IMG/VR virus record: IMGVR_UViG_3300009104_001210
Span: 1-64,000 of that record
Strand: one strand, 5' to 3'
DNA: 64,000 nucleotides
A program made the translations under genes and the position numbers. This document shows positions 6,794 through 51,990 of this stretch, piece by piece. Under the pieces are notes generated by a model. The model did no database searches. It saw only the letters and a list, made by a program, of their open reading frames with translations, and was not told where the DNA came from. The first letter of the stretch is position 1. Every line of letters starts with the position of its first letter.

Positions 6794-6801
6794 GAGTTGA
6801 T

Positions 6802-27978: not shown

Positions 27979-27998
27979 TGTTTTATTAATGAGTATGA

Positions 27999-28006
27999 TA
28001 TTTATA
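27999..28006 (+). promoter_or_regulatory. TATTTATA motif (putative promoter of the second island operon)
   Basis: Exact motif followed by TATGAG, at the head of a ~120-nt structured leader. Confidence 0.6.
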
Positions 28007-28007
28007 T

Positions 28008-28127
28008 ATGAGTCGGGTAGAGCTAACGCGAGTAAAGAACTTGAAAGTCCAAACCCTCTACAATATAAGACTATAAAACATGGGTGGCATCAAATGTTGA
28101 TGCCTTCATTAATTGGAGGCTTTTTTT
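28008..28127 (+). promoter_or_regulatory. Structured 5' leader of rmlC: candidate riboswitch/attenuator, also carrying a 22-codon uORF (28008-28076)
   Basis: AGTC/GACT (28011-14/28069-72) and GTAGAG/CTCTAC (28017-22/28056-61) stems. Perfect 8-bp hairpin GGCATCAA/TTGATGCC (28086-28104) overlaps a second hairpin that occludes the SD. Confidence 0.55.
28102..28127 (+). terminator. Intrinsic terminator-like and SD-sequestering hairpin
   Basis: GCCTTCA-TTAAT-TGGAGGC (7 bp incl. one G-U) followed by T7 and then the ATG at 28128. GGAGG is the SD. Confidence 0.6.
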
Positions 28128-37958: not shown

Positions 37959-38469
37959 ATGGAAAATAGGTAATATAGAACCATTTTGGGATGAACAATA
38001 TAAAGATTTAAATTATTATAAAGTTGTTCATAATAACCCTCAAGATATGGAAAGATGGAGAAAACAAGGATATACACATCCTGATGAACTTTTTACAGGT
38101 GCTATGTGTCCTCATGGTGAGAAACATCCAACTTGGAGTCATAAAATAGTAGAGTGGTTAGAAAAAGATTTTGATTGGAAAGATATAGGATTAAATTATT
38201 ATAGAATGGAAACAGGAGTTATATTACCATCACATGCGGATTTGTATCAAGAATATACAAAAAAATTTAATTTAACTCAACGTCAAGCAGAACGAGTTCT
38301 TCTTTTGTTAGAAGATTGGAAACCTGGTCATTATCTTGAAGTAGATGGTGAAGCAGTAGTAAATTGGGAAGCAGGTGATTGGGTGTGGTGGCCAGGTGAT
38401 ATGGAACACGCTGCGTCAAATATAGGACCTGAGTATAGATATTCATTACAATTGACAGGACACAAATAA
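37948..38469 (+). CDS. Fe(II)-dependent oxygenase/cupin-fold protein
   Basis: LPSHADLY (HxD), MEHAASNIG, RYSLQLTG. GAGG RBS before ATG 37948. Confidence 0.72.
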   Translation: MMNKWKIGNIEPFWDEQYKDLNYYKVVHNNPQDMERWRKQGYTHPDELFTGAMCPHGEKHPTWSHKIVEWLEKDFDWKDIGLNYYRMETGVILPSHADLYQEYTKKFNLTQRQAERVLLLLEDWKPGHYLEVDGEAVVNWEAGDWVWWPGDMEHAASNIGPEYRYSLQLTGHK

Positions 38470-39845
38470 TGGAAGATTTTAAATTTTTATCAGTAGACAA
38501 TCTTTTTGAAGAGGTTAGAGATGAAGTTGTTCATATAAAGATGAAACATTTAGTAATTAGAACAGGAGAGTGGATTGATAAGGATGGAAACTATAAACCA
38601 GGTAATCATCCAAGTAAAAAAAGAGTTTCTGCGGTTGATGCTGAAATGTTTATTCATAATTGGTATAGTGCGGAAGATTTTGAGAAACAAGAAAATTGGG
38701 AATATGAACTTATGGAAGAAAGTATTCTTAAACATGGTTTGAAAGAACCTATTATGATTAGACCTAGATTTGATACAGGAGATTATGAAATGTGGGATGG
38801 GTCTCATCGTATGGTAACTATAAAACATATTTTATTAACAAGACATCCTGAAGTTGATATTAATGAAGTAGAAATACCTTGTATAGAGAGAGAAACTTTT
38901 GAAGATCAACTTGACGAATATTATAAAGTAAAAGATAGAGCTAAAGAATTTGAAAAGACTATAGATTTTGGGATGGAACGATATAAAGGAGCTACAGCAT
39001 TTCCAGATGTGGAAGTTAATGAATTTTGGAAAACTATTAATAAAGAAATAGATATTAGTTATATTTTTTCATTGACAAGTTTATCACAAGCATTTTGTAA
39101 CGTATTTCATAAGTACATTAAAGCATCTAAATTAAATAAATTAAAAGGGTTGGATGATTATAAATATAAATCTTATACTAATGGAACAAGTCAAGCATTT
39201 GATTCATTTTGGATGAGACATAAAGATAAAAGATTTAAATGTTTTAAAGGGGAGTTCTTTTATCATAAAGCAAATTGGAGAAAATATTATAGGTGGGATT
39301 ATATAGAAGATACGGGTGTTAGTTCTAATGATGCAGTAGTTATTAGTTTCCCATTTAGTGATTATTGTAAAATACACCCTAAAATGATAGAAGTGTTAGA
39401 TAAGTGTGAAGAGTTAAAAGTTCCTGTTTTGATTGATTGTGCTTGGTATTTAATTGCAAAAAATATAAAATTTGATTTTTCAAAATATACTTGTATTGAA
39501 GATATAACTTTTAGTTTGAGTAAGGGATTTTATGGCGCACCTAAATTGAGAGCAGGTATTAGATATTCAAGAAATTATTACGATGATAATATTAATATTA
39601 TGAATGAATGGAAACAATATAATTATCTATCAGCATATATTGGTATTAAATTATTAGAAGAGTTTGAACCAGATTTTGCTTGGACAAAACGGGGTGAAGA
39701 ATATAAAAGATATTGTAAATCTAATAATTTTGAAGAAACTGATTGTGTTGGATTTGTTTTTGGTGGAGATGAATATAAAGAATTAAATAGAGGTACGGAA
39801 GTAAATAGATTGTGCATTGTTAACGACATTGGAGATAATTTTTGA
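38469..39845 (+). CDS. Fusion of a ParB/Srx-like N-terminal domain and a fold-type-I PLP-dependent enzyme
   Basis: ESILKHGLKEPIMI...YEMWDGSHR (ParB/Srx). TNGTSQAF, VLIDCAW, FSLSKGF (PLP Lys), RAGIR. Confidence 0.72.
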   Translation: MEDFKFLSVDNLFEEVRDEVVHIKMKHLVIRTGEWIDKDGNYKPGNHPSKKRVSAVDAEMFIHNWYSAEDFEKQENWEYELMEESILKHGLKEPIMIRPRFDTGDYEMWDGSHRMVTIKHILLTRHPEVDINEVEIPCIERETFEDQLDEYYKVKDRAKEFEKTIDFGMERYKGATAFPDVEVNEFWKTINKEIDISYIFSLTSLSQAFCNVFHKYIKASKLNKLKGLDDYKYKSYTNGTSQAFDSFWMRHKDKRFKCFKGEFFYHKANWRKYYRWDYIEDTGVSSNDAVVISFPFSDYCKIHPKMIEVLDKCEELKVPVLIDCAWYLIAKNIKFDFSKYTCIEDITFSLSKGFYGAPKLRAGIRYSRNYYDDNINIMNEWKQYNYLSAYIGIKLLEEFEPDFAWTKRGEEYKRYCKSNNFEETDCVGFVFGGDEYKELNRGTEVNRLCIVNDIGDNF

Positions 39846-40807
39846 ATATATTAGTTACAGGTGGTGCAGGATATCTTGGTTCAGTAATTGTTCCTTTGTT
39901 ATTAGATAAAGGTTATGATGTAACCGTATATGATAATTTGATGTATAATCAGTTAACATTGAGTGATTTATGTTATAAATCTAATTTTAAATTTGTATAT
40001 GGAGATGTTAGAGATTATAAAAAATTAAATGAGTATGTACAGAAAGCAGATGTGATAATACCATTGGCTGCGATAGTTGGTTTTCCTGCTTGTGAAAAAG
40101 ATAAACAATTAGCAGAAGAGGTAAATTATAATCAGATATATGATTTAATAACTAATACATCTAAAGAACAAACTATTATTTTTCCAAATACAAATAGTGG
40201 TTATGGAACTCGTTCAAGTGGTATATGTACGGAAGATCAAAAATTACAACCAATTAGTCATTATGGAATAACCAAATGTAATGCAGAAGATATATTATTA
40301 CAAAATGGTAATGCAATTATCTTTAGATTTGCTACGGTGTTTGGTGTATCACCAAGAATGAGATTAGATTTATTAGTTAATGAATTTGTTTATAAAGCAT
40401 TGACGGATAAATATATTACTATCTTTGAAAGAAAAGCAGTTCGTAACTATATTCATATCAGAGATGTAGCTTCAGTATTTGAATGGATGGTTGTTCTTCG
40501 TGATATACATAGAGGTGAGATATTCAATGTAGGATTATCAAACGCTAATATCAATAAACAACAATTAGCTGAAATGATTAAAAAATATATTTCAGATTTT
40601 GCTATTACTTATTCTGATTATTATGAGGATCCTGACAAAAGAGATTACATTGTAAGTAATGAAAAAGTAGAAAGCACAGGTTGGCTACCTAAATATACTT
40701 TACACGATGGTATAAAAGAATTAATAATGGCTTATCAAATAATAATAAATAATGATACAAGTCATTTTAGAAATGGATTTCCTTTAACATATGGGGCAGC
40801 ATTATGA
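39842..40807 (+). CDS. NAD-dependent epimerase/dehydratase (extended SDR)
   Basis: TGGAGYLGS, PLAAIVGFPAC, canonical YGITK, RFATVFG, RNYIHIRD. TTG start. Confidence 0.88.
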   Translation: MNILVTGGAGYLGSVIVPLLLDKGYDVTVYDNLMYNQLTLSDLCYKSNFKFVYGDVRDYKKLNEYVQKADVIIPLAAIVGFPACEKDKQLAEEVNYNQIYDLITNTSKEQTIIFPNTNSGYGTRSSGICTEDQKLQPISHYGITKCNAEDILLQNGNAIIFRFATVFGVSPRMRLDLLVNEFVYKALTDKYITIFERKAVRNYIHIRDVASVFEWMVVLRDIHRGEIFNVGLSNANINKQQLAEMIKKYISDFAITYSDYYEDPDKRDYIVSNEKVESTGWLPKYTLHDGIKELIMAYQIIINNDTSHFRNGFPLTYGAAL

Positions 40808-41712
40808 GAATATTAATAACAGGAGTAACAGGTTTAATAGGTTCTAATCTTTATAGACTATTAAAAGAAAATAATTATGAAGTAGATGGAATATCATCTA
40901 AAGATGGAGATTTAACATCACTTGATGTTTGTAAAGATTTGATACAAGGTTATGATACAATTGTTCATTGTGCAGCAAATACATCAAACGCTTTTGATAC
41001 AGAGAAATCACCATTGGTTCACGTTACACCAAATGTTGCTATGAATGCTAATGTGATGGATGCAGCTTATCATAGTGGAGTTAAAAAATTTATTTTTATT
41101 AGTAGTTCCACAATATATCCACCATCAGATGAAAGACCAGTAAAAGAAACTGATCATATTTTTGATGAACCATATCCTGCATATTTTCCTGTTGGGTGGA
41201 TGAAAAGATATGCAGAAGTATTATGTGATATGTATTCTAATCGTTTAGATAAAACTATGCAGTGTATAGTTGTTAGACCTGCGAATGTATTTGGACCAGG
41301 AGACAAATGGGATTTTGATAAATGTCATGTAACACCTGCTACAATTAGAAAAGTAGTTGATAAACACAATCCAATTAAAGTTTGGGGAGATGGTTCTGAA
41401 ATAAGAGATTTGATTTATGTAAATGATGTTGCAGAAGCACTTAAACTTATCATAGATAAAGTAGATAAGTATTCTATTTGGAATGTAGGTAGTAATACTG
41501 CTTATTCTGTAAATGATGTTTTAGATATGTGTATGGAAATAGAAAATTATGAAGCACCAATAGAATATGTTGGTGGTATGAAACCAATGATTCCTATAAG
41601 AAAAATAAATTCTAATAAGATGGGTGATGATCTTAAATGGGAATGTAAGTATACGTTGAAAGAGGGATTAGAAAAAACAATTAAATGGTATAAAGAAAAT
41701 TATGTTAAGTGA
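40804..41712 (+). CDS. NAD-dependent epimerase/reductase, GDP-L-fucose-synthase-like
   Basis: GVTGLIG, HCAA, FISSS, RPANVFGPGD, WGDGSEIRD. The YxxxK position reads VGWMK. Confidence 0.82.
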   Translation: MRILITGVTGLIGSNLYRLLKENNYEVDGISSKDGDLTSLDVCKDLIQGYDTIVHCAANTSNAFDTEKSPLVHVTPNVAMNANVMDAAYHSGVKKFIFISSSTIYPPSDERPVKETDHIFDEPYPAYFPVGWMKRYAEVLCDMYSNRLDKTMQCIVVRPANVFGPGDKWDFDKCHVTPATIRKVVDKHNPIKVWGDGSEIRDLIYVNDVAEALKLIIDKVDKYSIWNVGSNTAYSVNDVLDMCMEIENYEAPIEYVGGMKPMIPIRKINSNKMGDDLKWECKYTLKEGLEKTIKWYKENYVK

Positions 41713-42343
41713 GTACGAAAAAAATAGTTATATAATAATAGATAATCTTTTAGAACAATCTTTATATAATCAACTTCTTGAGTTGTGTGTATCTTCTAAA
41801 TATGAAGAGGTGAACCAAATTAGAGAGGGTAGATATAAAACTTGGGAAACTAAAGGAGACGAAAACTTTCCATCAGAAGATGAAGATTATTTAGCTCATA
41901 TGTGGGCAAGTAATTCTATACTTGAAACAGATTTATTTAAAAATGTTTTTGAGAATTATATTAAACCACATATGCTTACTTTAACTGATAATAAAGTATC
42001 AAGGTTTATGCACCAAGCAAACAAATATAATAATGATGGAAAAGATTTTATTAGATTACATTATGATGATTATATGGGTATGTGTGGTTATATATTTTAT
42101 GTGAATGAAATTCAATGGAAATATGATTGGGGTGGTTTATTACAATTTACAAAAGATGATAAAATAAGCACGGTATTACCTAATCCAAATAGATTGGTAT
42201 TGACAAACCATTCTGCAAGAATAGGACATTGGGTCACACCAACAAATGTATGGGCTAAAGCAAATAGATATGTCTTAACAGGATTTTCATTAGAAGAAGA
42301 TAGAGAATTACCTGAGACTTGGAAAAAGAGGATAGATGAATAA
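41702..42343 (+). CDS. 2OG-Fe(II) oxygenase
   Basis: IRLHYDD (HxD), DWGGLL.F, PNPNRLV, GHWVTP, RYVLTGF. Confidence 0.82.
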   Translation: MLSEYEKNSYIIIDNLLEQSLYNQLLELCVSSKYEEVNQIREGRYKTWETKGDENFPSEDEDYLAHMWASNSILETDLFKNVFENYIKPHMLTLTDNKVSRFMHQANKYNNDGKDFIRLHYDDYMGMCGYIFYVNEIQWKYDWGGLLQFTKDDKISTVLPNPNRLVLTNHSARIGHWVTPTNVWAKANRYVLTGFSLEEDRELPETWKKRIDE

Positions 42344-43487
42344 TTTAAGATGGAGAGAACCCTGGGGTGGTTCTATGAGTCCTGAAGATACGGGATTGTG
42401 CAATAGACTTTTCCATTGGGAAATAGCATATGGTTTATGTAAAGCTAATGATTTTAAATTTAATATATTATTAGAAGAAAATTATTGGCCAGAATTACAA
42501 TATATAGAACTTCCATATACAAGAGGAGTACATCACGATGAGTTAAGAGATGAAAAATATAATTATGTTAGTTCTAAATTTTATAAAGGTACTACACCGA
42601 TTACTTATAAAAAATTAAAACAAATGTCGGATAAAAAGAATTATAAATTAAATATAAGTAAAGATTATTATTCTAATTTTGGATTTCATTTTATTGATGA
42701 GTTTAGTGATTTTGATGAAGATACAGGTGCATTATTATCTAGACCATCTCAGTTAATAACACTTCAAGATCAGTTTCTTGAAATGTTTATCAAAAAATAT
42801 ACAGAAAAAACTGTAGGATTACATATACGAAGGTGGCCAACGGGAGTTTTTAGAGATGAAGATGATGTTAAAGGATTTAGAGATGGAGAACCTGTAGATT
42901 GGGAAGTTGACGAATCAGATTTGTTAAATTTAGAAAATGTAGGAATTGCAGGAAAGCCACCAGATAATCTTTACTTTCTTAAAGATGACTCTGAAGTGGT
43001 AAAGGAGAGATTAAGACAATTAAAAAGCCCTATGAAAGATGGAAAGTTACTTTTACAGTACTCAGGAGATCCTGTGGGATATACTGCTGTGAATAATAGT
43101 GTATATATGTATATAATGGATGAGATGTTAAAAATAAATCCCAATCAAAAATTTTACCTTAGTAGTGATGTTAATAAAAAGAATTTGAAAATATTTTATG
43201 ATAATTATGACATTATTGATTTTGATACAATTATGAACGAATCGCCATTGATGAGAAGACATTTTAGACGTACTAAAACTTTACATCCACCTGAAGGATT
43301 CCACCAATATGTTTTAAAAAATGTAGTGGATTTGTTTTCATTAGCTAATTCTTATTTTTTAATTGCATTTGGAGATTCAACTTTTAGTACATTTGCACAA
43401 GATTATAAAATTATACCTGGAATTTTTCCACAAGATAAATTTAATGAAGAAGATAAACAAGCTTATATAAAGGTTATTGAATCATGA
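42336..43487 (+). CDS. GT11/GT23 (NodZ)-like fucosyltransferase-fold glycosyltransferase
   Basis: GLCNRLF, VGLHIRR, FYLSSD, VDLFSLA....STFS. Confidence 0.68.
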   Translation: MNNLRWREPWGGSMSPEDTGLCNRLFHWEIAYGLCKANDFKFNILLEENYWPELQYIELPYTRGVHHDELRDEKYNYVSSKFYKGTTPITYKKLKQMSDKKNYKLNISKDYYSNFGFHFIDEFSDFDEDTGALLSRPSQLITLQDQFLEMFIKKYTEKTVGLHIRRWPTGVFRDEDDVKGFRDGEPVDWEVDESDLLNLENVGIAGKPPDNLYFLKDDSEVVKERLRQLKSPMKDGKLLLQYSGDPVGYTAVNNSVYMYIMDEMLKINPNQKFYLSSDVNKKNLKIFYDNYDIIDFDTIMNESPLMRRHFRRTKTLHPPEGFHQYVLKNVVDLFSLANSYFLIAFGDSTFSTFAQDYKIIPGIFPQDKFNEEDKQAYIKVIES

Positions 43488-44272
43488 ATGTAGTAGTTAT
43501 AGGAGATAGTTGTAATGATATTTTTATTTATGGAGACATAGAAAGAATAAGTCCAGAAGCACCTATACCAGTTTTTAAACCAACACATAAAGAATCAAAT
43601 GGTGGTATGGCAAAAAATGTTGTAAACAATGTAGAATCATTAGAAATGACTATCTATACAGTTACAAATGAAAATACAATTGTGAAAAAACGATATGTAG
43701 ATAATCGTTCAGGACAAATGGTATTAAGAGTTGATGAACATGATTATTGTGATAGAGTAGAAATAAAAAAATTACAAGGTATAAAAAATAATAAATTTAA
43801 ATCTTATGGGTTGGGTGGTAATATAGATAAAATTGATGCAATTATTATTTCAGATTATTGTAAAGGATTTTTAGAAGAAAGTGATATAGAACATATTTGT
43901 AAATACAATAAAAATGTATTCGTGGATACTAAAAAGAAACTCGGTAAGTGGATTAAAGACGCAGATTATATTAAAATAAATGAGTTAGAATATAAAAAGA
44001 ATTACGAGTTATTATCAGATAAAGGATTTAGAGATAAACTTATTGTTACATTAGGTAGTAAAGGTTGTAGATATAAAGGATTAGAATATCCAGTAAAAGA
44101 AGTTCCTGTAAGGGATGTAAGTGGAGCAGGGGATACATTTATTGCAGGATTAGTTCGTGGTTATTTAGATACCAATAACATATATGAAGCAATTAAGTTT
44201 GCACAGAAATGTACTACAGTAGTTGTACAGAAACATGGAGTTGCAACAGTTACATTAGAGGAGATTTTATGA
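43484..44272 (+). CDS. PfkB sugar kinase, HldE/RfaE domain I-like (heptose-7-phosphate kinase)
   Basis: RISPEAPIPV, GGMAKNV, IISDYCKG, VDTK, VTLGSKG, DVSGAGDTF. Confidence 0.88.
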   Translation: MNVVVIGDSCNDIFIYGDIERISPEAPIPVFKPTHKESNGGMAKNVVNNVESLEMTIYTVTNENTIVKKRYVDNRSGQMVLRVDEHDYCDRVEIKKLQGIKNNKFKSYGLGGNIDKIDAIIISDYCKGFLEESDIEHICKYNKNVFVDTKKKLGKWIKDADYIKINELEYKKNYELLSDKGFRDKLIVTLGSKGCRYKGLEYPVKEVPVRDVSGAGDTFIAGLVRGYLDTNNIYEAIKFAQKCTTVVVQKHGVATVTLEEIL

Positions 44273-44988
44273 AAGTTAAGTATTTAGCTTGGCCTTATGG
44301 AAAATTAGGAAGTAAAGAACGTCCAGAACTTACTGAATTAAAAGATGCTGGATATGAATTTTCAGATCCATTTGATGTTATAGATATTTTTGAGAAAAAA
44401 GTAGCAAAATTTGCAGGAAGTAAATATGCTTGTGCTGTAAATAGTTCAAGTAGTGGATTGTTTCTTTGTTTAAAATATTATTGGGATCAGTTTTATGGGA
44501 TGAGAAATTTTCCTCAAACAGTAAAAATTCCTGGTAGAACTTATGTTTCAGTTCCAATGACAATTATCAATGCAGGATATAAAGTAGAGTTTGAGGATTT
44601 AAAATGGAAAGGTATTTATCAATTAAAACCATATACTATATGGGATGGTGCTTGTAGATGGACAAAGGATATGTATGTTGGTGATAATGCTTTACAAATA
44701 GTATCTTTTAATATTAAAAAGAGAATACCAATAGGTGCAGGTGGAATGGTATTAACTGACGATAAAAAAGCATATGAATGGATAAAACTTGCAAGTCATG
44801 ATGGTCGTAATGTTAATGTTCATTATGGAGATGATGATTTTGCTATGATAGGATGGCATATGTATATGTTACCCGAAGATGCTGCTAGAGGAATATTATT
44901 AATGGATTCAGTACCAGAAGTAAACGAAGATGTTTATAGTTGGGAAAACTATTATGACGTATCAGATAAAGAGGTTTTTAATAAATAA
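44269..44988 (+). CDS. DegT/DnrJ/StrS aminotransferase, short form (~239 aa)
   Basis: FEKKVAKFAGSKYACAVNS, P..TYVSVP, WDGA, SFNIKKRIPIGAGGM. GAGGAG RBS before ATG 44269. Confidence 0.82.
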   Translation: MKVKYLAWPYGKLGSKERPELTELKDAGYEFSDPFDVIDIFEKKVAKFAGSKYACAVNSSSSGLFLCLKYYWDQFYGMRNFPQTVKIPGRTYVSVPMTIINAGYKVEFEDLKWKGIYQLKPYTIWDGACRWTKDMYVGDNALQIVSFNIKKRIPIGAGGMVLTDDKKAYEWIKLASHDGRNVNVHYGDDDFAMIGWHMYMLPEDAARGILLMDSVPEVNEDVYSWENYYDVSDKEVFNK

Positions 44989-45860
44989 TGGGACGAGGTA
45001 ATTTAACATTATATAATACTGAACACAAATCTTTTGAGTGGAATCAATTTCCTTTATTAATTGATACTAATAAAGTGGGTATTAGGGATCTTAAATGGCA
45101 CAGTACTGATAAAGAAGAATTCTTTAAAATGAATTTAGAAGAACTTGGTTCAGATTGGGAATATGCAGATAGTGAAAAAACATTGCGATATGATTTTAAT
45201 AGTTGGGGTTATAGAGCAAAAGAATTAGATTATTTAGATAAAGATAATATATTAGTAATGGGTTGTAGTATTACAGAAGGAGTTGGATTACATAAAAATG
45301 ATATATGGTGTCATCAACTTAGTCAAGCATTAGATATAGATATTTTAAATTTGGGTAAAGGGGGAGTTGGACCAGATACTCTTTATATTAATACTGTTTT
45401 ATTTATTAAAAACATATATCCAAAACTCAGAAAGAAAAAACCAAATTTAATAATTTATCAATGGCCTCAAAGTTTTAGAAGAAGTTTTGCTTATGTTAAT
45501 GTTAATTATGATAAAAAAACTACAGATTTAGAGTTTACACATTATAATATAAATACGGTAGCTAGTGATAGAGATTATACTTGGTTTAGAACAAGATATT
45601 TGAGAGAAAATGGTGAAATGTATAGAGATCATTATATTAATTTTTGTGCAATAAATAATATGTGGAAAGCATTAGATATACCTGTTTTACATTGGTCTTA
45701 TTTACAAGATTTTGAATTACAGTTAGATATTAAAAGTGTACAAAAGGTAGAAATAACAAGTCAGAATAAGGATAAAGCTAGAGATTTAAAACATGATGGT
45801 AAGTTAGCACACAGCCAAGTAGTAGACGAATTAATACCTAATGTAAAGAAAATGTTATGA
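44988..45860 (+). CDS. SGNH/GDSL-fold protein
   Basis: FNSWGYR, MGCSITEG, NLGKGG, ARDLKHDG..AH. Confidence 0.6.
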   Translation: MGRGNLTLYNTEHKSFEWNQFPLLIDTNKVGIRDLKWHSTDKEEFFKMNLEELGSDWEYADSEKTLRYDFNSWGYRAKELDYLDKDNILVMGCSITEGVGLHKNDIWCHQLSQALDIDILNLGKGGVGPDTLYINTVLFIKNIYPKLRKKKPNLIIYQWPQSFRRSFAYVNVNYDKKTTDLEFTHYNINTVASDRDYTWFRTRYLRENGEMYRDHYINFCAINNMWKALDIPVLHWSYLQDFELQLDIKSVQKVEITSQNKDKARDLKHDGKLAHSQVVDELIPNVKKML

Positions 45861-47002
45861 GTGAAGGATTAGTTAATAAAGCGCAATATCATTTTGAAAG
45901 ATTAAATGATACTATTAATGGTAGTAGAATGCCTGTTCCTTTGAGTCTTGAGTTACAAATAACTAATACTTGCCATCAAGCCTGCTATTATTGTAATTCA
46001 GAAATATTTAGAGAACATAATCCTGATAAAGCAACTACTGAAGATTGGATAAATTTTATAGATAATTTACCTGAAGGAATTAAAGATGTTACCTTTTCGG
46101 GAGGTGGAGAACCATTAGATCATTTAGATGCAGATAAAATTATAAATTATGTTTTACATAAGGGATATAAGGTAGGATTGATAACTAATGGAGCAAGATT
46201 TAGACATTTAAATTTTACAAAAGAATATAGACCAAATTGGGTAGGTATTGATTTTGATACTGCAGATTCTAAAAAATATTTTCAAATAAGAAAAGGTAAT
46301 TTAGAAAAAGTAAAGAAAAGTATTTCTGAAAAAATGAGTGAGTTTCAAAGTTATGGTACTTTTTTTACTTATAAAGTTTTAATTAATGATTATAATTCAG
46401 AAATAGAAGATTTAAAAGCTAGCGTTGATTTAGCAGTAGAAATGGGATTTGATGAATATTTTCAGAGAATAGTTTATTTTGGTTATAGAACAGAAGATAT
46501 GGAAGGAGCAGGTAATAGAACATTAAAACCACCTAAAGGATATACGTGGGAAGAAGTTGAAAATGAAGTTAGAGATTATTGTGAAAAGAAAGGAATTTCA
46601 TATAAAGGTACATTTGGAAAACAAAGGCATTCTAAATTAATTAGAAATGCTGATTCCAATATAGAAAATTATGAATGGAATGAATCAACTCAAACTCATA
46701 TGGTAAAACAATGTTTTGCACCTTTATTTTATGTGGTTGTTAATTCAAACGGTGATATTTTGTGGTGCTGTGAACATTTAGGAAATAAAGATTATGTGGT
46801 AGATAATTGGATAGATAATGGATTATCATTTTTAGAAGAAAAGGGATTACTTGATAAAATGAAAAATTTTATTGATTGGAGAAAATGTGATAGTCAATGT
46901 AGATATTATGATTATAATAAGTTTTCAGCTAGAGTTAGTGATGGTTATTACAAGTATTCAGAAAATGAAATAAGAACAGGTCATGAAAAAGGATTTTTTT
47001 AA
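45857..47002 (+). CDS. Radical SAM protein with C-terminal SPASM/twitch domain
   Basis: NTCHQACYYC; SGGGEPL; ITNG; CFAP...NGDILWCC...CDSQCR. Confidence 0.88.
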   Translation: MSEGLVNKAQYHFERLNDTINGSRMPVPLSLELQITNTCHQACYYCNSEIFREHNPDKATTEDWINFIDNLPEGIKDVTFSGGGEPLDHLDADKIINYVLHKGYKVGLITNGARFRHLNFTKEYRPNWVGIDFDTADSKKYFQIRKGNLEKVKKSISEKMSEFQSYGTFFTYKVLINDYNSEIEDLKASVDLAVEMGFDEYFQRIVYFGYRTEDMEGAGNRTLKPPKGYTWEEVENEVRDYCEKKGISYKGTFGKQRHSKLIRNADSNIENYEWNESTQTHMVKQCFAPLFYVVVNSNGDILWCCEHLGNKDYVVDNWIDNGLSFLEEKGLLDKMKNFIDWRKCDSQCRYYDYNKFSARVSDGYYKYSENEIRTGHEKGFF

Positions 47003-48021
47003 TGGTAAGAGTTAATAACGAATGGGATAGGTTAAGAGAAGTATTCGTTGGTACAGTAGAAAATGCAAATAATCCAATTAAGGGTAAAGATTTACATGCG
47101 ATTAATTATGCAGATAAAAATAATATAGATGATGTAAAAGAGGGTTATTATCCTGAACAAGTTATAGAAGAAACAAAAGAAGATTTAGATATTCTTGTAC
47201 AATCTTTAAAATCTTTTTTTGATATTAAAGTTCGTAGAATGAAACCGAATCAAAATAATAAAATATTTCAAACAATTGATTGGGTTTCAGATGGATATTA
47301 TACATTTTGTCCGAGAGATAGTGTTACAGTAATTGGAGATACGATTATAGAATCACCAATGACGTTACGTTCACGATATTTTGAGACATTTGGATTTAGA
47401 GATCAGTTTATTGAGTATATGGAAGATGGTGCAAGGTGGGTATCAGCACCAAAACCAAGATTAACCGATGATAATTATCAAAGAAGAGATTTAACTAAAT
47501 TAACACTTACAAATGTAGAACCCGTTTTTGATGCGGCTAACATTTTACGGTGTAATAAAGATATATTATATTTATTATCGAACACAGGTAATAAACTTGG
47601 TGCAAAATGGTTACAAAACTTTTTAGGTGATGAATATAAGGTTCATGTTCTTGAAAATATGTATTCTTATGTTCATATTGATTCAACTATAGCACTTTTA
47701 AGGGAAGGATTGTGTTTATTGAACCCAGAAAGAGTGAATGATGACAATATGCCTGAAATTTTAAAGTCGTGGGATAAGATTTGGTGTCCACCTTGTGTAG
47801 ATATTGGATATTATGGTAATTTTAACCACGCATCTACTTGGATTGGGTTAAATTTGTTATCAATTGATGAAAATACTGTTATTGTAGATGAAAGTCAAGT
47901 AGAGTTACATAAATTATTGAAAAAGCATAATGTTGATAGTTTACCATTACGAATAAGACATTCGAGAACACTTGGTGGCTCATTTCATTGTGTAACTACG
48001 GATATACATAGGCAAAGTTAA
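47002..48021 (+). CDS. Amidinotransferase (glycine or inosamine-phosphate amidinotransferase family)
   Basis: NEWDRLREVFVG, CPRD, HIDSTI, RTLGGSFHCVT (Asp/His/Cys catalytic set). Confidence 0.92.
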   Translation: MVRVNNEWDRLREVFVGTVENANNPIKGKDLHAINYADKNNIDDVKEGYYPEQVIEETKEDLDILVQSLKSFFDIKVRRMKPNQNNKIFQTIDWVSDGYYTFCPRDSVTVIGDTIIESPMTLRSRYFETFGFRDQFIEYMEDGARWVSAPKPRLTDDNYQRRDLTKLTLTNVEPVFDAANILRCNKDILYLLSNTGNKLGAKWLQNFLGDEYKVHVLENMYSYVHIDSTIALLREGLCLLNPERVNDDNMPEILKSWDKIWCPPCVDIGYYGNFNHASTWIGLNLLSIDENTVIVDESQVELHKLLKKHNVDSLPLRIRHSRTLGGSFHCVTTDIHRQS

Positions 48022-48022
48022 T

Positions 48023-49309
48023 ATGGAAAAAGTAATCATAGTAAATCCCGACGCTAAAATGGATGCAAAGCAATTTGCATATGCACCTTTGGGTCCATTA
48101 TACATTGCGGCTGTCTTAGAAAGAGATGGTTTCGAATGTGAGTTGTGGGATTTAAGAGAAGATTACAATTCTTATGATAATCCACCAAAAGGTGATATCT
48201 ACTGTATCACTGCCGTTACACCACAAATAGATGATATGAAAGAAGTGGCTCGTAACATTAAAAAGAAGTATGGTGATAAAGCATATACAATTTTAGGTGG
48301 CCCACACGCAACTTGGTTACCAGATGATTGTGTTGACCATTTTGATTGTGTAGTTCAAGATGAAGCTGAAGGAATTATAACCAAAATATGTACAGAGAAA
48401 CCAACAGGTGTTCAAAGAGGTGATAGGATTGTTGATTTAGATACAATACCACATCCAGCAAGGCACTTACTTCCCGACCATAGAGCAGCAAGTACAGATT
48501 TGTGGGGTGGATATAACTACGAAAGTAATGTGATTGGTGCGACACTTATGTCAAGTAGAGGTTGTCCTTTCGCCTGTGCCTTTTGTGCCAACCTACAACA
48601 AAAAACAAGATTTAGAAGTGCAGAAAATGTTATAGAAGAAATAGAACTAATGATTGAAAAGTATGGTGTAAAACATTTTAGATTCTTAGATGACAATATA
48701 ATCATAGATAAGAAAAGGTTTGAAAGATTAGCACCAATGTTACACGAATTAGATATTAGGTTTAGATGTTCGATTAGTTCAGTATTATTAAATGATGAGT
48801 ATTGTGAATTATTATATCACGCAGGATGTAGAGAGGTTGGTATAGGTTTTGAATCGGCAGATGACGACATACTAAAACTTATTAATAAAGCTGGTAAAGC
48901 AACCAACAATATGCACAAAGATGCAGTTCAAGTTATACAGAAGTGGGGAATGAAAGCTAAGGTTTATATTATTACAGGTTTACCTGGTGAAACAAAAGAA
49001 TCAATAGAAGCAACAAAGAAGTTTGTATTAGATTTAAAACCCGATAAGTGGATTTGTTTATTATTCACACCATATCCTGGTACACCTATTTATATGAATC
49101 CTGATTTCTATGGTGTAGAGATAATACATAAAAGGTTTAGAGAATATGTTCAGTCTTACCCATCAAAGAGTCATGTAAATCTTAAAAAGATAGGTAATGG
49201 TGAGATATTGGCAACAAATAAAGATTTAGAAGAAAGGTTTGAAGATTTGTATCATTGGTTAAACAAATTAAATCCAGAATCTATGGAGTATAGTTCTTTT
49301 AATGGATAA
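48023..49309 (+). CDS. B12-binding radical SAM protein (class B methyltransferase-like)
   Basis: APLGPLYIAA, GGPHAT, SRGCPFACAFC, IGFESAD, ITGLPGET. Confidence 0.9.
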   Translation: MEKVIIVNPDAKMDAKQFAYAPLGPLYIAAVLERDGFECELWDLREDYNSYDNPPKGDIYCITAVTPQIDDMKEVARNIKKKYGDKAYTILGGPHATWLPDDCVDHFDCVVQDEAEGIITKICTEKPTGVQRGDRIVDLDTIPHPARHLLPDHRAASTDLWGGYNYESNVIGATLMSSRGCPFACAFCANLQQKTRFRSAENVIEEIELMIEKYGVKHFRFLDDNIIIDKKRFERLAPMLHELDIRFRCSISSVLLNDEYCELLYHAGCREVGIGFESADDDILKLINKAGKATNNMHKDAVQVIQKWGMKAKVYIITGLPGETKESIEATKKFVLDLKPDKWICLLFTPYPGTPIYMNPDFYGVEIIHKRFREYVQSYPSKSHVNLKKIGNGEILATNKDLEERFEDLYHWLNKLNPESMEYSSFNG

Positions 49310-49312
49310 TTT

Positions 49313-49738
49313 ATGATAATGGCAATTTTATATAATAAAAGTTATAAAGATATTGCAGTTAGTACAAGAGAAGAAATAATTAATTATTTTTCTCATATGC
49401 CTGGAAAGAAGAATACACCACATCGGTTGGTATCAGATCATAAAAATTTCGTAGATAATTTTCAAATGGAATCACGTAATACATTTGATGTTTTTGAAGT
49501 TTATATAAAAGGGCCTCAAGATAAAAATGCAGAATATAATGAAATTTGGCCAAAAAACTATGTTACAACTGTTTTTAGTAAAAGAGAACTTAATAGATTG
49601 CCAAAAGAAAATGAAATAATAGAAACTTTAGATACGATATCTGATTTTGAAAAAGGTCTTTATATAAGAAGAAGAGTTATAGTTGAAGGCGCAGATATAA
49701 GGGATCCAAGTGATCCAGGAGTAGAACATTTGGTATGA
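49313..49738 (+). CDS. Hypothetical protein
   Basis: 141-aa ORF coupled to the next gene (ATGA overlap). No recognised motif. Confidence 0.65.
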   Translation: MIMAILYNKSYKDIAVSTREEIINYFSHMPGKKNTPHRLVSDHKNFVDNFQMESRNTFDVFEVYIKGPQDKNAEYNEIWPKNYVTTVFSKRELNRLPKENEIIETLDTISDFEKGLYIRRRVIVEGADIRDPSDPGVEHLV

Positions 49739-51207
49739 GAATATTTGGTTTTAATGCATTGAATCATGATGCAGCTTTAAGTGTTATAGAAGATGGTGAA
49801 ATACTTTTCGCAGGTCATTCAGAAAGATATAGTGGTAAAAAGTTTGATGCTGAATTAAATGAAGAAATGGTACACGAAGCGCTTTCATATGGAATGCCTG
49901 ATAAGGTAGCATGGTTTGAAAAACCATATCTTAAAAAGACAAGACAACTTTGGGCAGGTCAATACGGAGAAGTATTTAATACATCTAATATTCCATCTCA
50001 ATATCTAAAACAATTCGGTATATATAATAAAGTTCAGTATGTTCCACATCATTTATCTCATGCTTCAGCAGGATATTACACTTCACCTTATGATGAAGCG
50101 GCAATTGTAGTTATAGATGCTATTGGTGAATGGGATGTAATGTCTATATGGTATGGGTGTGGAAATAAATTAGAAAAACGTTGGTCAAAGAAGTATCCAC
50201 ATTCACTTGGGTTATTTTATTCAGCTATGACACAAAGACTTGGATTGAAACCACAAGAAGATGAATATATTCTAATGGGAATGGATGCTTGGGGTCAGAG
50301 AGATAAAAAAATAAAAAATAGAATATATGATGATTTAATTAGAACTCGTATGAATCTTCATCGAGGATGTTCGGCTTGGGATTTAGATTTTTATCCTGAC
50401 GATGATAGTGATAAGTGGAAATTTGATGTAGCAGCAAATGTACAATGGATATGTGAAGAAGAAATCCAAAAAATATTTAAATTAACACAACGGTTAGTAC
50501 CCGAAACTAAAAATTGTGTTTATATGGGTGGAGTAGCATTGAATTGTGTAGCTAATTCAATTATAGCAAAAGATTATTATCCTAATTTATGGATATTTCC
50601 AAATCCAGGAGATGCAGGTTCATCACTTGGTTGTGCGGCATATGTATATGGTGAACATATTAATTGGAAAACACCATTTACAGGATATAATATAAAAGGT
50701 GAGTACCCTGTTACTCAAGTGAGTAAAGAACTACTCAAGGGAAATATAGTTGGTGTGGCAAATGGTAAAGCAGAATTTGGACCAAGAGCATTAGGGAATA
50801 GAAGTTTACTTGCTGACCCAAGAGGTGATGATATAAAAGATAAAGTAAACAAAATTAAACATAGACAAGAATTTAGACCTTTTGCACCATCTGTATTAGA
50901 GGAATATGCACATGAAATCTTTGATATGCCTGTTCGGAAATCTCAGTTTATGCAGTTTGTAGCAGATTGTAAGTATCCTGAAAAATATCCTGCTATTTGT
51001 CATGTGGATGGAACTTCAAGAGTTCAGACGGTAAGTAAAGATGATAATCCTGCTTATTATGAGTTAATAAAACAATTTTTTGAAGAAACAAGGTGTCCTA
51101 TGGTATTAAACACAAGTTTAAACATAAAAGGACAGCCAATTGTTAATGATGAGACAGATGCTTTAGATTTTCAAAAGCGTTATGGAGTAAAGGTTTTTAC
51201 TAAATAA
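49735..51207 (+). CDS. O-carbamoyltransferase (NodU/CmcH/TobZ family)
   Basis: NHDAA, HHLSHAS, GGVALNCVAN, GDAG, EFGPRALGNRS, FRPFAP, HVDGTSRVQTV, LNTSLN. Confidence 0.93.
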   Translation: MRIFGFNALNHDAALSVIEDGEILFAGHSERYSGKKFDAELNEEMVHEALSYGMPDKVAWFEKPYLKKTRQLWAGQYGEVFNTSNIPSQYLKQFGIYNKVQYVPHHLSHASAGYYTSPYDEAAIVVIDAIGEWDVMSIWYGCGNKLEKRWSKKYPHSLGLFYSAMTQRLGLKPQEDEYILMGMDAWGQRDKKIKNRIYDDLIRTRMNLHRGCSAWDLDFYPDDDSDKWKFDVAANVQWICEEEIQKIFKLTQRLVPETKNCVYMGGVALNCVANSIIAKDYYPNLWIFPNPGDAGSSLGCAAYVYGEHINWKTPFTGYNIKGEYPVTQVSKELLKGNIVGVANGKAEFGPRALGNRSLLADPRGDDIKDKVNKIKHRQEFRPFAPSVLEEYAHEIFDMPVRKSQFMQFVADCKYPEKYPAICHVDGTSRVQTVSKDDNPAYYELIKQFFEETRCPMVLNTSLNIKGQPIVNDETDALDFQKRYGVKVFTK

Positions 51208-51989: not shown

Positions 51990-51990
51990 T

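What the first reader, a model, noticed from the sequence alone, without database searches (positions are those of the whole stretch)
43484..51207. Aminoglycoside-style tailoring cassette: kinase, DegT aminotransferase, twitch rSAM, amidinotransferase, B12 methyltransferase, carbamoyltransferase
Seen: these enzymes sit in one run at the 3' end of the island. Established: the same families make streptidine (StrS/StsC aminotransferase, StrB1 amidinotransferase acting on a phosphorylated inosamine), oxidise or epimerise aminosugars (BtrN, NeoN), C-methylate gentamicin (GenD1, GenK) and carbamoylate tobramycin (TobZ). Inference: the phage builds a guanidino-, C-methyl- and carbamoyl-bearing aminosugar or aminocyclitol. 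It could be a cationic glycan cap, or a diffusible small molecule, which would be very unusual for a phage.
Basis: partly seen in the sequence, partly recalled or inferred. Interest (0 to 1): 0.8.

Follow-up and report, generated by a model that had tools for sequence, protein, structure and literature searches.

The report
Phage guanidino-sugar tailoring gene block
An uncultured marine T4-like phage carries a tightly packed gene run, centred on a streptomycin-type amidinotransferase, that most likely makes an unusual positively charged (guanidino) sugar for a phage-built glycan rather than a free antibiotic.

Summary
Two genes were missed: an SGNH esterase/acyltransferase (44988-45860) and a 141-aa orphan. 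The key call holds. 47002-48021 is a StrB1-type amidinotransferase (PDB 1bwd, E 1e-111, almost gap-free, catalytic Asp/His/Cys intact), far closer to StrB1 than to SxtG, HsvA or AGAT.

Three details need correcting:
- The aminotransferase is a compact 239-aa DegT whose fold matches nucleotide-sugar aminotransferases.
- The kinase is a heptose-7-phosphate-kinase-type PfkB shared with cyanophages.
- No cyclitol-forming enzyme is in the window.

The block ends a ~46-kb island of soluble sugar enzymes, glycosyltransferases and at least nine radical SAM enzymes. No island protein has a membrane segment.

A four-gene core keeps its order in a second, distant phage lineage: fucosyltransferase-like GT, mini-DegT, SGNH, amidinotransferase. 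The twitch rSAM, B12-rSAM and carbamoyltransferase are lineage-specific. The kinase is facultative.

Best reading: a guanidino, probably carbamoylated and C-methylated, aminosugar built for a glycoconjugate. The acceptor is unresolved. An aminocyclitol or diffusible antibiotic is poorly supported. Bacterial homologues at 43-47% identity sit in amino-acid/NRPS-like contexts, so the acceptor cannot be read from sequence.

The parts
42336..43487 (+). Fucosyltransferase-like (NodZ/FUT8/O-FucT-type, GT-B) glycosyltransferase.
   Evidence: No Pfam hit. Protein-atlas feature and structure neighbours are NodZ/FUT8/O-FucT/GT11 clusters, mostly viral. It is found about 1.0 kb upstream of the mini-DegT in every locus that also has the amidinotransferase next to it.
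43484..44272 (+). PfkB-family sugar kinase of the heptose-7-phosphate-kinase (HldA / HldE domain I) type. It is a facultative member.
   Evidence: Pfam PfkB 8.7e-19. NCBIfam rfaE_dom_I 2.5e-38, below the curated cut-off. PDB 4e84 HldA 3.8e-12. phrog_8133 4e-83. It is 40-46% identical to the cyanophage 'carbohydrate kinase', which in P-SSM2 lies next to a nucleotidyltransferase, GmhA and a carbamoyltransferase. It is absent from L004. It lies within about 1 kb of the amidinotransferase in L006 and L018.
44269..44988 (+). Compact (239 aa) DegT-type PLP-dependent sugar aminotransferase ('mini-DegT'), lacking most of the C-terminal domain.
   Evidence: Pfam DegT 2e-12, partial. The homologues are 195-239 aa long with invariant Asp126 and Lys151, and Lys151 aligns with the PseC Schiff-base lysine. 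AlphaFold2 model pLDDT 77. Foldseek PDB top hits are GDP-perosamine synthase, ArnB, PseC and DesI, E 1e-8, TMq about 0.6. The start at 44269 follows from the homologues and from the ATGA overlap with the kinase stop codon.
44988..45860 (+).
   Evidence: Invariant GCS (Ser94), Gly, Asn121 and Asp266-x-x-His269 in 10 homologues. Atlas neighbours are Lipase_GDSL, DUF6071 and AlgX-like. Foldseek PDB hits are acetyl xylan esterase, CE2 and GDSL lipases.
45857..47002 (+). Radical SAM enzyme with one twitch-like auxiliary-cluster motif; lineage-specific.
   Evidence: Pfam Radical_SAM 2.6e-18; SPASM 0.0094, below cut-off. CX3CX2C at residue 39, and Cys286/304/305/344/348. PDB best hits are GDGT-MAS, SkfB and PqqE; BtrN is not found at E<0.01. 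It is present in L002-L004, with weak (about 25%) relatives in L006 and L011.
47002..48021 (+). StrB1-type L-arginine-dependent amidinotransferase; the anchor gene.
   Evidence: PDB 1bwd E 1.3e-111, one single-residue gap on each side; SxtG 3e-61, HsvA 3e-59, AGAT 8e-53. Asp177, His225 and Cys330 are invariant in 11 viral homologues. 38 viral loci at 64-100% identity. 3293 metagenomic homologues. The viral sequences lie on one side of a branch from 80 bacterial ones.
48023..49309 (+). Class B (cobalamin-domain) radical SAM enzyme, a candidate C-methyltransferase; lineage-specific.
   Evidence: Pfam B12-binding 7e-12 plus Radical_SAM 8e-29. NCBIfam best hits are PhpK, BchE and HpnJ, all far below their cut-offs. 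PDB best hit is AprD4 at 8e-12. It occurs only in L001-L005 at 91-100% identity.
49313..49738 (+). 141-aa orphan ORF, function unknown.
   Evidence: No family, atlas or structure lead. It occurs only in L001-L003. A 15-nt in-frame deletion seen in two metagenomes is compatible with a coding sequence.
49735..51207 (+). NodU/CmcH/TobZ-family O-carbamoyltransferase; lineage-specific here but common in cyanomyoviruses.
   Evidence: Pfam Carbam_trans_N 1e-37 and Carbam_trans_C 6e-57. phrog_1601 'Nol-like carbamoyltransferase' 8e-103. PDB 7xb6, NovN, GdmN and TobZ. 39% identical to the P-SSM2 enzyme over its C-terminal 280 residues.
5210..42343 (+). The rest of the glycan/radical-SAM island (context). 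It holds three GT7-LamG fusions, four SDR epimerases/dehydratases, an RmlC-like protein, a split TPP enzyme, two UDP-glucose-dehydrogenase-like genes, two P4H-like 2OG oxygenases and at least seven more radical SAM genes.
   Evidence: Pfam scans. No transmembrane-like segment in any protein.

Best explanation
The interval is the 3' tailoring end of a ~46-kb, all-soluble glycan factory in a marine T4-like myophage. Its portal is nearest to Flavobacterium phage 'immuto' and Microcystis phage Mel-JY01.

The conserved core is four genes: a fucosyltransferase-like GT, a compact DegT aminotransferase, an SGNH enzyme and a StrB1-type amidinotransferase.

Proposed mechanism (inferred unless marked otherwise):
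1. An activated keto-sugar, made by the island's SDR dehydratases/epimerases, is transaminated by the mini-DegT. The PLP Lys151 and Asp126 are shown to be conserved.
2. The amidinotransferase takes the amidino group from L-arginine onto Cys330. The Asp177/His225/Cys330 triad is shown to be conserved.
3. It passes the amidino group to the new sugar amine, giving a guanidino sugar. The acceptor probably carries a phosphate or NDP handle, as StrB1's natural acceptor does.
4. In this lineage the sugar is further edited by a twitch-like radical SAM enzyme (oxidation or epimerisation), a cobalamin radical SAM enzyme (probably C-methylation) and an O-carbamoyltransferase.
5. The PfkB kinase activates a heptose-type sugar at the anomeric position.
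6. The SGNH enzyme adds or removes an O-acyl group.
7. The GT then places the cationic sugar on a glycan that the island's other GTs build on a soluble acceptor made during infection. My first choice for that acceptor is a virion protein.
For: - Enzyme identities.
- Catalytic residues conserved.
- Gene order: GT, mini-DegT, (rSAM), SGNH, amidinotransferase is kept in L024-L037, although protein identity has fallen to 28-65%.
- Fixed offsets: among the 80 best mini-DegT loci, the 8 that have an amidinotransferase all have the GT at about -1.0 kb (-1.9 kb where the kinase intervenes), the SGNH at +0.7 kb and the amidinotransferase at +1.5 kb, or +2.7 kb where a rSAM intervenes.
- The amidinotransferase is followed by an RmlD/epimerase-type SDR and a UDP-glucose dehydrogenase in L032.
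- The cultured cyanophage S-SCSM2R has a mini-DegT, a rSAM and the amidinotransferase embedded among five glycosyltransferases.
- The mini-DegT fold matches NDP-sugar aminotransferases. In other phages it sits with SDRs in 33 of 80 loci.
- The kinase or a rSAM recur beside the amidinotransferase in L006 and L018.
- No membrane protein, flippase, polymerase or exporter is in the island.
- The island lies between a tail-fibre gene and the lysis/packaging genes, on the same strand.
Against: - No product or acceptor has been observed. No RNA run holds the gene.
- No nucleotidyltransferase partner or GmhA was found in the window.
- The amidinotransferase's nearest bacterial clade sits with SbnA/SbnB-like and NRPS-like genes, implying an amino-acid acceptor there.
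- In the phage group L006-L023 its neighbours include PALP-like, AMP-binding and methyltransferase/GNAT genes rather than a clear sugar set.
- 72 of the 80 best mini-DegT loci lack the amidinotransferase.
- Class B radical SAM enzymes do chemistry other than methylation. The best PDB hit is the dehydratase AprD4.
- The virion-protein acceptor is inferred only from gene position and solubility.
Confidence: 0.5

Rival explanations
1. The block makes a streptidine-like guanidino aminocyclitol, or a free aminoglycoside-like small molecule, which is released (for example at lysis) and acts as a diffusible agent.
For: - StrB1 is the best solved relative.
- Kinase, aminotransferase and amidinotransferase together recall the streptidine logic.
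- Carbamoyl plus guanidino recalls bluensidine (own knowledge).
- Actinomadura and Frankiaceae homologues lie near a carbamoyltransferase in natural-product-like clusters.
- The S-SCSM2R authors call the trio 'antibiotic synthesis genes' (PMC12801897).
Against: - No cyclitol synthase, inositol dehydrogenase, APH-type inosamine kinase or phosphatase.
- The kinase is the heptose-kinase type and is absent from L004.
- The aminotransferase fold matches NDP-sugar enzymes.
- The conserved neighbours are glycosyltransferases.
- No exporter or self-resistance gene, and no membrane protein at all.
Confidence: 0.08
2. The island decorates the phage's own DNA. The glycan, including the guanidino sugar, is attached to a hydroxymethylated pyrimidine as an anti-restriction hypermodification.
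For: - Phage BGCs with a kinase, a cytidylyltransferase and a GT-B have been shown to put heptose and other glycans on 5hmC (bioRxiv 10.1101/2023.12.21.572611).
- T4-like phages are the classic DNA glycosylators (own knowledge).
- All island proteins are soluble.
- A cationic sugar on DNA would help charge neutralisation (inference).
Against: - No dCMP/dUMP hydroxymethylase, C5-methyltransferase, TET/JBP-type oxygenase or 5-hmdU DNA kinase was detected in the 64-kb window. The two 2OG oxygenases hit P4H-type models.
- The P-loop kinase-like 51240-51989 is a conserved hypothetical of pelagimyophages, not of phages known to hypermodify DNA.
- The other 152 kb of the contig was not examined.
Confidence: 0.12
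3. The island supplies unusual nucleotide sugars to the host's own envelope machinery. This remodels LPS, capsule or S-layer glycans during infection, for example for superinfection exclusion or to avoid trapping of progeny.
For: - Cyanomyoviruses such as P-SSM2 carry the same kinase and carbamoyltransferase next to heptose/LPS-type genes.
- Many island enzymes are of the LPS/capsule type: RmlC-like, SDRs and UDP-glucose dehydrogenase.
Against: - The island encodes its own glycosyltransferases: three GT7-LamG fusions and one fucosyltransferase-like GT.
- It has no initiating phosphoglycosyltransferase, flippase, polymerase or ligase, and no membrane protein.
- A ~46-kb investment by a lytic phage in host-surface remodelling is hard to rationalise (inference).
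Confidence: 0.15
4. The amidinotransferase does not act on a sugar. It amidinates an amino acid, a polyamine or a protein lysine, and its place in the run reflects mosaic shuffling of hypervariable-island genes.
For: - The large bacterial clade at 43-47% identity sits with L-Dap-synthesis-like genes and an NRPS-like A-PCP protein.
- HsvA, a solved relative, uses polyamines (substrate from own knowledge).
- In L009 and L020 the neighbours include AMP-binding and PALP-like genes.
- Most mini-DegT loci lack the amidinotransferase.
Against: - Fixed order and spacing with GT, mini-DegT and SGNH in two lineages that have diverged to 28-65% identity.
- 1-4-nt start/stop overlaps with its upstream neighbours in the window.
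- No Dap-synthesis or adenylation gene in the window.
Confidence: 0.12

Closest known systems
StrB1, L-arginine:inosamine-phosphate amidinotransferase of streptomycin biosynthesis (PDB 1bwd)
   Same: Full-length, almost gap-free alignment at E 1e-111. About half the residues are identical: 57 of 104 in the middle block, by my count of that alignment. Same short architecture, 339 vs 348 aa. The same Asp/His/Cys triad falls at the aligned positions.
   Different: - Phage-borne and 29% GC.
- It forms its own viral group, apart from all 80 bacterial representatives.
- No inosamine pathway surrounds it.
- Its partners are a glycosyltransferase, a mini-DegT and an SGNH enzyme.
- The acceptor is unknown.
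Cyanomyovirus 'LPS/heptose' gene set (e.g. P-SSM2: Nol-like carbamoyltransferase, heptose nucleotidyltransferase, PfkB kinase, GmhA, next to a tail-fibre gene)
   Same: The kinase is about 40% identical and the carbamoyltransferase 39%. Both sets lie in a T4-like phage near tail-fibre genes.
   Different: The window has no GmhA or HldE-II-type nucleotidyltransferase. It adds the amidinotransferase, the mini-DegT, the SGNH enzyme and two radical SAM enzymes.
Synechococcus phage S-SCSM2R ORF305-309 ('antibiotic synthesis genes', PMC12801897)
   Same: It has a mini-DegT (195 aa, 33-35% identical), a radical SAM enzyme and an amidinotransferase (45% identical), clustered with glycosyltransferases and 2OG oxygenases.
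   Different: - Its radical SAM enzyme is not detectably related to 45857-47002.
- No SGNH or fucosyltransferase-like homologue was detected, and no carbamoyltransferase is annotated in the stretch examined.
- The function was not tested there either.
Virus-encoded glycan factories: Megavirinae fibril glycosylation clusters and phage DNA-glycan hypermodification BGCs
   Same: They are large viral gene sets that make rare bacterial-type sugars and transfer them with virus-encoded GTs onto a viral macromolecule (PMC10117803; bioRxiv 10.1101/2023.12.21.572611).
   Different: None of those described carries an amidinotransferase or this density of radical SAM enzymes. The search of the DNA-glycan paper found no 'amidino', 'carbamoyl' or 'radical SAM'.
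Bluensidine/streptidine tailoring in aminoglycosides, with TobZ, GenK/GenD1 and BtrN (own knowledge plus PDB hits)
   Same: The same enzyme superfamilies occur in one operon: amidinotransferase, O-carbamoyltransferase, class B rSAM and twitch-type rSAM.
   Different: There is no aminocyclitol core enzyme. The rSAM enzymes show no specific similarity to BtrN, GenK or GenD1. The context is glycosyltransferases rather than pseudo-oligosaccharide assembly, and there is no resistance or export gene.

Membership tests
AGAT/StrB1 amidinotransferase family (guanidino-group-modifying 'pentein' superfamily) | Full-length homology to a solved member | tested here: met
   PDB phmmer: StrB1 1.3e-111 (residues 2-337 vs 4-339), SxtG 3e-61, HsvA 3e-59, AGAT 8e-53.
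AGAT/StrB1 amidinotransferase family (guanidino-group-modifying 'pentein' superfamily) | Catalytic Cys-His-Asp triad | tested here: met
   Asp177, His225 and Cys330 align with the StrB1 motifs FDAAN, HVDST and FHCAT. They are invariant in 11 viral homologues.
AGAT/StrB1 amidinotransferase family (guanidino-group-modifying 'pentein' superfamily) | Arginine-dependent amidino transfer activity | not testable with these tools
   Needs an enzyme assay.
StrB1 subtype (short form, open active site) | StrB1 length, without the extra segments of AGAT/SxtG | tested here: met
   The alignment to StrB1 has one single-residue gap on each side. The alignment to SxtG spans 347 chain residues for 335 of the query, with several gaps.
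Streptidine (scyllo-inosamine) pathway | A cyclitol source: inositol-phosphate synthase or sugar-phosphate cyclase, plus an inositol dehydrogenase | tested here: not met
   No such Pfam family in any of the 56 window ORFs of 100 aa or more at E<=0.01.
Streptidine (scyllo-inosamine) pathway | An inosamine kinase adjacent and conserved with the amidinotransferase | tested here: inconclusive
   The kinase is the PfkB heptose-7-P-kinase type. It is absent from L004 and L024-L037 but lies beside the amidinotransferase in L006 and L018.
Streptidine (scyllo-inosamine) pathway | StsC-type glutamine:scyllo-inosose aminotransferase | tested here: inconclusive
   The mini-DegT hits a scyllo-inositol transaminase only at E 0.06 by sequence. 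Its best fold matches are NDP-sugar aminotransferases.
DegT/DnrJ/EryC1/StrS sugar aminotransferases | PLP Schiff-base lysine and the pyridinium-binding aspartate | tested here: met
   Lys151 aligns with the PseC lysine in the SF(H/N)xxK motif. Lys151 and Asp126 are invariant in 11 homologues.
DegT/DnrJ/EryC1/StrS sugar aminotransferases | Complete two-domain architecture of about 360-390 aa | tested here: not met
   The protein is 239 aa, and the whole phage family is 195-239 aa. Foldseek alignments cover about 240-250 columns of targets of about 367 residues.
Twitch-type radical SAM enzymes (BtrN-like) | CX3CX2C plus a partial-SPASM cysteine set for one auxiliary cluster | tested here: met
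   CX3CX2C at residue 39; Cys286-x12-Gly-x4-Cys304, Cys305, and Cys344-x3-Cys348. The Pfam SPASM hit is only 0.0094.
Twitch-type radical SAM enzymes (BtrN-like) | Specific sequence similarity to BtrN or NeoN | tested here: not met
   PDB hits at E<0.01 are GDGT-MAS, SkfB, PqqE and cytosylglucuronate decarboxylase, not BtrN.
Class B (cobalamin-dependent) radical SAM methyltransferases (GenK/GenD1-like) | N-terminal B12-binding domain plus a radical SAM core | tested here: met
   Pfam PF02310 7e-12 and PF04055 8e-29; CX3CX2C at residue 181.
Class B (cobalamin-dependent) radical SAM methyltransferases (GenK/GenD1-like) | Assignment to a C-methyltransferase subfamily | tested here: inconclusive
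   The best NCBIfam hits (PhpK, BchE, HpnJ) are all far below their cut-offs. The best PDB hit is AprD4, a dehydratase.
NodU/CmcH/TobZ O-carbamoyltransferases | Both Carbam_trans_N and Carbam_trans_C domains above the gathering score | tested here: met
   130.6 and 192.3 bits against cut-offs of 24 and 27. PDB TobZ 4e-40 and NovN 1e-51.
SGNH hydrolase superfamily | Ser, Gly, Asn and His blocks with a DxxH motif | tested here: met
   Ser94 (in GCS), Gly, Asn121 and Asp266-x-x-His269 are invariant. The fold matches SGNH esterases.

The most novel reading that the evidence does not exclude
A lytic marine phage encodes the full route to a free, aminoglycoside-like cationic (guanidino, carbamoyl, C-methyl) sugar metabolite. 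The metabolite is released at lysis and acts on neighbouring cells or competing phages, i.e. a phage-made diffusible antibiotic or signal.
Probability: 0.07. Interest if true: 0.95.

Novelty: new variant of a known kind. Interest (0 to 1): 0.62.

Why it matters
To my knowledge, guanidino sugars are known almost only from aminoglycoside antibiotics. If phages put one on a glycoconjugate, that would be new glycan chemistry: a permanently cationic sugar on a virion, or on DNA.

The amidinotransferase is not a one-off. It occurs in 38 IMG/VR loci and has more than 3000 metagenomic homologues. The block itself is near-identical in marine metagenomes from a dozen studies, so any function applies to an abundant group of ocean phages.

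The result also corrects a published reading of the same trio in cyanophage S-SCSM2R as 'antibiotic synthesis genes'. It points to that cultured phage as a tractable system.

The compact 195-239-aa DegT family and the amidinotransferase would be useful enzymes for making guanidinylated sugars.

Tried and rejected
- Pfam, NCBIfam and PHROGs gave nothing useful for the amidinotransferase, so its identity rests on the PDB sequence search (vs 17).
- blastn against phage genomes found only the carbamoyltransferase.
- I looked for GmhA and an HldE-II nucleotidyltransferase in the window by tblastn with the P-SSM2 proteins and found none.
- I tested whether the N-terminal cytidylyltransferase-like domain of the 1097-aa protein (52977-56270) is the heptose nucleotidyltransferase. 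Similarity was only a 33-residue motif match (E 0.008), with a GRFQPF..HH motif that I recall as NMNAT-like, so I did not include it.
- I tested whether the P-loop kinase-like 51240-51989 is a DNA 5-hmdU kinase. Its relatives are hypotheticals in pelagimyophages, Melnitz and jumbo phages, so I set it aside.
- The 141-aa ORF gave no lead by families, atlas or structure.
- The promoter/terminator scan was uninformative: fewer sites than in shuffles, and no + strand terminator.
- The RNA-run search found no holder.
I rebuilt the alignment without that row.
- The careful ML tree did not finish. I report the quick tree with SH-aLRT support only. Identical sequences and hits under 300 aa were left out.

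Full report
**What the window is.** All substantial ORFs lie on the + strand and GC is about 29%.
- The 3' part encodes a T4-type large terminase, a gp20-type portal (Pfam 5e-78) and a gp21-type prohead protease, so this is a T4-like myophage.
- The portal's nearest cultured relatives are Flavobacterium phage vB_FspM_immuto (54%) and Microcystis phage Mel-JY01 (52%).
- The window equals positions 1-64000 of the 216-kb contig IMGVR_UViG_3300009104_001210 (locus L002).
- Between a tail-fibre-like gene (154-1851, endosialidase-chaperone domain) and the lysis/packaging genes lies a ~46-kb island (5.2-51.2 kb). It holds three GT7-LamG fusion glycosyltransferases, four SDR epimerases/dehydratases, an RmlC-like protein, a split TPP enzyme, two UDP-glucose-dehydrogenase-like genes, two P4H-type 2OG oxygenases and at least nine radical SAM genes.
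- None of the 56 window proteins has a transmembrane-like segment.

**The observation.** The interval 43484-51207 is bounded exactly by a start and a stop codon. It holds eight genes joined by 4-nt overlaps or gaps of 3 nt or less.
- PfkB kinase.
- DegT.
- A radical SAM enzyme with CX3CX2C plus a five-cysteine C-terminal motif, CX12GX4C...CX3C, that fits one auxiliary cluster, i.e. twitch-like.
- The amidinotransferase.
- A B12-domain radical SAM enzyme.
- A two-domain NodU/TobZ-type carbamoyltransferase.

- An SGNH-fold gene at 44988-45860. Ser94, Gly, Asn121 and Asp266-x-x-His269 are invariant, and the fold matches acetyl-xylan and CE2 esterases.
- A 141-aa orphan.
- The upstream gene 42336-43487 is a NodZ/FUT8/O-FucT-like glycosyltransferase.
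- The DegT is truncated.

The arrangement is real. Single metagenomic contigs from independent studies bridge DegT to the B12-rSAM gene. Runs from 12 studies hold about half or more of the stretch's sampled words.

**The amidinotransferase.** Pfam and NCBIfam are silent on it. A sequence search of the PDB gives the following:

| Solved relative | E-value | Note |
|---|---|---|
| StrB1 (1bwd) | 1.3e-111 | residues 2-337, one single-residue gap on each side |
| SxtG | 3e-61 | |
| HsvA | 3e-59 | |
| AGAT | 8e-53 | |

- Asp177, His225 and Cys330 align with the StrB1 motifs that carry the catalytic triad (the StrB1 numbering Asp179/His227/Cys332 is from my own knowledge). They are invariant in 11 viral homologues.
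- The gene is common in phages: 38 IMG/VR loci at 64-100% identity and 3293 metagenomic homologues, the best 120 all 65% identical or more.
- One cultured phage, Synechococcus phage S-SCSM2R, carries a copy at 45%. Campylobacter CP220-type phages carry one at 31%.
- Among 185,579 species-representative bacterial genomes, the 80 best matches reach only 43-47% identity.
- In a quick ML tree, the 24 distinct viral sequences sit on one side of a branch from all 80 bacterial ones (SH-aLRT 95). The careful search did not finish. Duplicates and hits under 300 aa were left out.

There is an important caution, though. The large bacterial clade at 43-47% identity sits next to SbnA-like and SbnB-like genes and an NRPS-like adenylation-carrier protein in Halioglobus, which points to an amino-acid acceptor there. 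About 50% identity to StrB1 therefore does not identify the acceptor.

**The other enzymes.**
- *Aminotransferase.* It is a compact form. The true start is 44269 (ATGA overlap with the kinase stop; homologues start there), giving 239 aa. The whole phage family is 195-239 aa, with invariant Asp126 and Lys151. Lys151 aligns with the PseC Schiff-base lysine. An AlphaFold2 model (pLDDT 77) matches GDP-perosamine synthase, ArnB, PseC and DesI, all nucleotide-sugar aminotransferases.
- *Kinase.* Its best matches are the heptose-7-phosphate kinases HldE domain I and HldA. It is phrog_8133. It is 40-46% identical to the cyanophage 'carbohydrate kinase'. In P-SSM2 that kinase lies between a heptose nucleotidyltransferase and GmhA, directly after a Nol-like carbamoyltransferase and near a tail-fibre gene. 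The window's carbamoyltransferase is 39% identical to the P-SSM2 one.
- *Missing partners.* No GmhA or HldE-II homologue is in the window.
- *B12-rSAM.* It has no specific affinity to GenK or GenD1. Its best hits are PhpK, BchE, HpnJ and, in the PDB, AprD4.
- *Twitch-like rSAM.* It shows no specific similarity to BtrN.
- *Cyclitol enzymes.* No cyclitol-forming or inositol-oxidising enzyme is present.

**Co-occurrence.**
- The complete run is kept in the close relatives L002-L004. L001 and L005 are cut off upstream of the amidinotransferase and keep only the downstream genes. L004 (87% identical amidinotransferase) lacks the kinase and the orphan.
- A second lineage, L024-L037, has the amidinotransferase at 64-68% identity, GC 28-30% and contigs up to 333 kb. 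It keeps the order fucosyltransferase-like GT, mini-DegT, (a B12-rSAM in some), SGNH, amidinotransferase, SDR. These partners have diverged to 28-50% identity. The block is preceded by GT7-LamG genes and two radical SAM genes, and followed by a UDP-glucose dehydrogenase, a GDSL gene, DUF5672 and a full-length DegT.
- Searching from the mini-DegT instead gives 164 viral relatives. Of the best 80 loci, 33 carry an SDR but only 8 carry the amidinotransferase within 10 kb. Those 8 all have the GT, SGNH and amidinotransferase at fixed offsets.
- The kinase lies within about 1 kb of the amidinotransferase in two further lineages. In L006 a rSAM 24.5% identical to 45857-47002 lies between them. L018 is the second.
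- In L009 and L020 the neighbours include AMP-binding, PALP-like and methyltransferase/GNAT genes.
- In S-SCSM2R the mini-DegT, a different rSAM (no detectable similarity) and the amidinotransferase sit among five glycosyltransferases and 2OG oxygenases.

Overall, a four-gene core is stable. The kinase is facultative but recurrent. The twitch rSAM, B12-rSAM and carbamoyltransferase are lineage-specific additions.

**Mechanism.**
- *Shown:* the enzyme families, their catalytic residues, the tight operon-like packing, the conserved order with a glycosyltransferase, the all-soluble island, and its position among late/structural genes.
- *Inferred:* an activated keto-sugar is transaminated by the mini-DegT. 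The StrB1-type enzyme moves the amidino group of arginine, via Cys330, to the new amine, giving a guanidino sugar. The acceptor probably carries a phosphate or NDP handle, by analogy with StrB1 and because of the recurrent kinase. In this lineage the sugar is further oxidised or epimerised, probably C-methylated, and O-carbamoylated. The fucosyltransferase-like GT then adds it to a glycan built by the island's other GTs.
- *Acceptor:* because no initiating transferase, flippase, polymerase or exporter is encoded, I favour a soluble acceptor made during infection. A virion protein is my first choice. DNA and the host envelope are rivals. I put 0.5 on the guanidino-sugar-for-a-glycoconjugate reading as a whole.

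**Comparison with what is known.**
- The chemistry resembles aminoglycoside tailoring (StrB1, TobZ, class B and twitch rSAM enzymes).
- The system fails the membership test for a streptidine-type pathway: no cyclitol source, no StsC-specific aminotransferase, and a kinase of another family that is not consistently present.
- In organisation it resembles virus-encoded glycan factories (Megavirinae fibril glycans; phage DNA-glycan BGCs; cyanomyovirus heptose/carbamoyltransferase sets). It adds an amidinotransferase and an unusual load of radical SAM enzymes.
[quoted passage not shown] The evidence here argues for a glycan role instead.

**Verdict.** Novelty: a new variant of a known kind. Interest 0.62. 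The block is a widespread, uncharacterised phage module that probably makes a sugar type unknown in glycoconjugates. Its product and target remain untested.

Noticed in passing
window 15097-16332, 17632-19083, 22331-23599: Three radical SAM genes carry a SPASM/twitch-like cysteine motif (C-x17-CC ... CxxC; Pfam SPASM 1.6e-13 and 2e-7 for the first two) at the N-terminus, before the CX3CX2C core. This is the reverse of the usual domain order.
   Followed up: partly
window 2007-2975 and 4029-5144: Two very acidic proteins (D+E 53-62 vs K+R 19-24) with weak Hint/intein-type domain hits lie between the tail-fibre-like gene and the first glycosyltransferase. They are possible self-processing structural proteins or glycan acceptors.
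   Followed up: no
window 29557-30150 and 30135-30680: A split thiamine-diphosphate enzyme (an E1/DXP-synthase-like N part and a transketolase pyrimidine-binding part) sits between an RmlC-like gene and an SDR. It could add a two-carbon branch or extend a sugar chain.
   Followed up: no
window 52977-56270: A 1097-aa, very basic protein (K+R 187 vs D+E 114) has an N-terminal cytidylyltransferase-like domain with a GRFQPF..HH motif that I recall as NMNAT-like. It is conserved in L004/L005 (67%). The first 340 residues have no PDB sequence match.
   Followed up: partly
L087 5849-13269 (Halioglobus sp. chromosome): The bacterial StrB1-like amidinotransferase clade, highly conserved across many phyla, sits after SbnA-like (PALP) and SbnB-like (ornithine cyclodeaminase family) genes and before a 1409-aa adenylation-carrier-hexapeptide protein. 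This suggests an amidinated diaminopropionate product.
   Followed up: partly
window 49409 (inside the 141-aa ORF): A 15-nt in-frame deletion relative to the window is present in contigs of two independent seawater metagenomes (X5, X9).
   Followed up: no
window 16325-17047: There is a weak, sub-threshold Pfam hit to MptE-like/DUF115 (E 1.4e-4). As I recall, that family includes the Maf flagellin nonulosonic-acid transferases, so this may be a further glycosyltransferase candidate.
   Followed up: no
window 51240-51989 / 51901-52473: The P-loop kinase-like gene has homologues in Pelagibacter phage HTVC008M and Methylophilales phage Melnitz at 45%. It overlaps the listed TTG start of the GH108 endolysin by 89 nt. 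The GH108 domain begins at residue 40, so the endolysin probably starts further downstream.
   Followed up: partly
L120-L199 (viral contigs): The compact 195-239-aa DegT family is widespread in phages: 164 relatives found, with locus GC from 27 to 44%. It is usually next to SDR and UDP-glucose-dehydrogenase genes and mostly lacks the amidinotransferase.
   Followed up: partly
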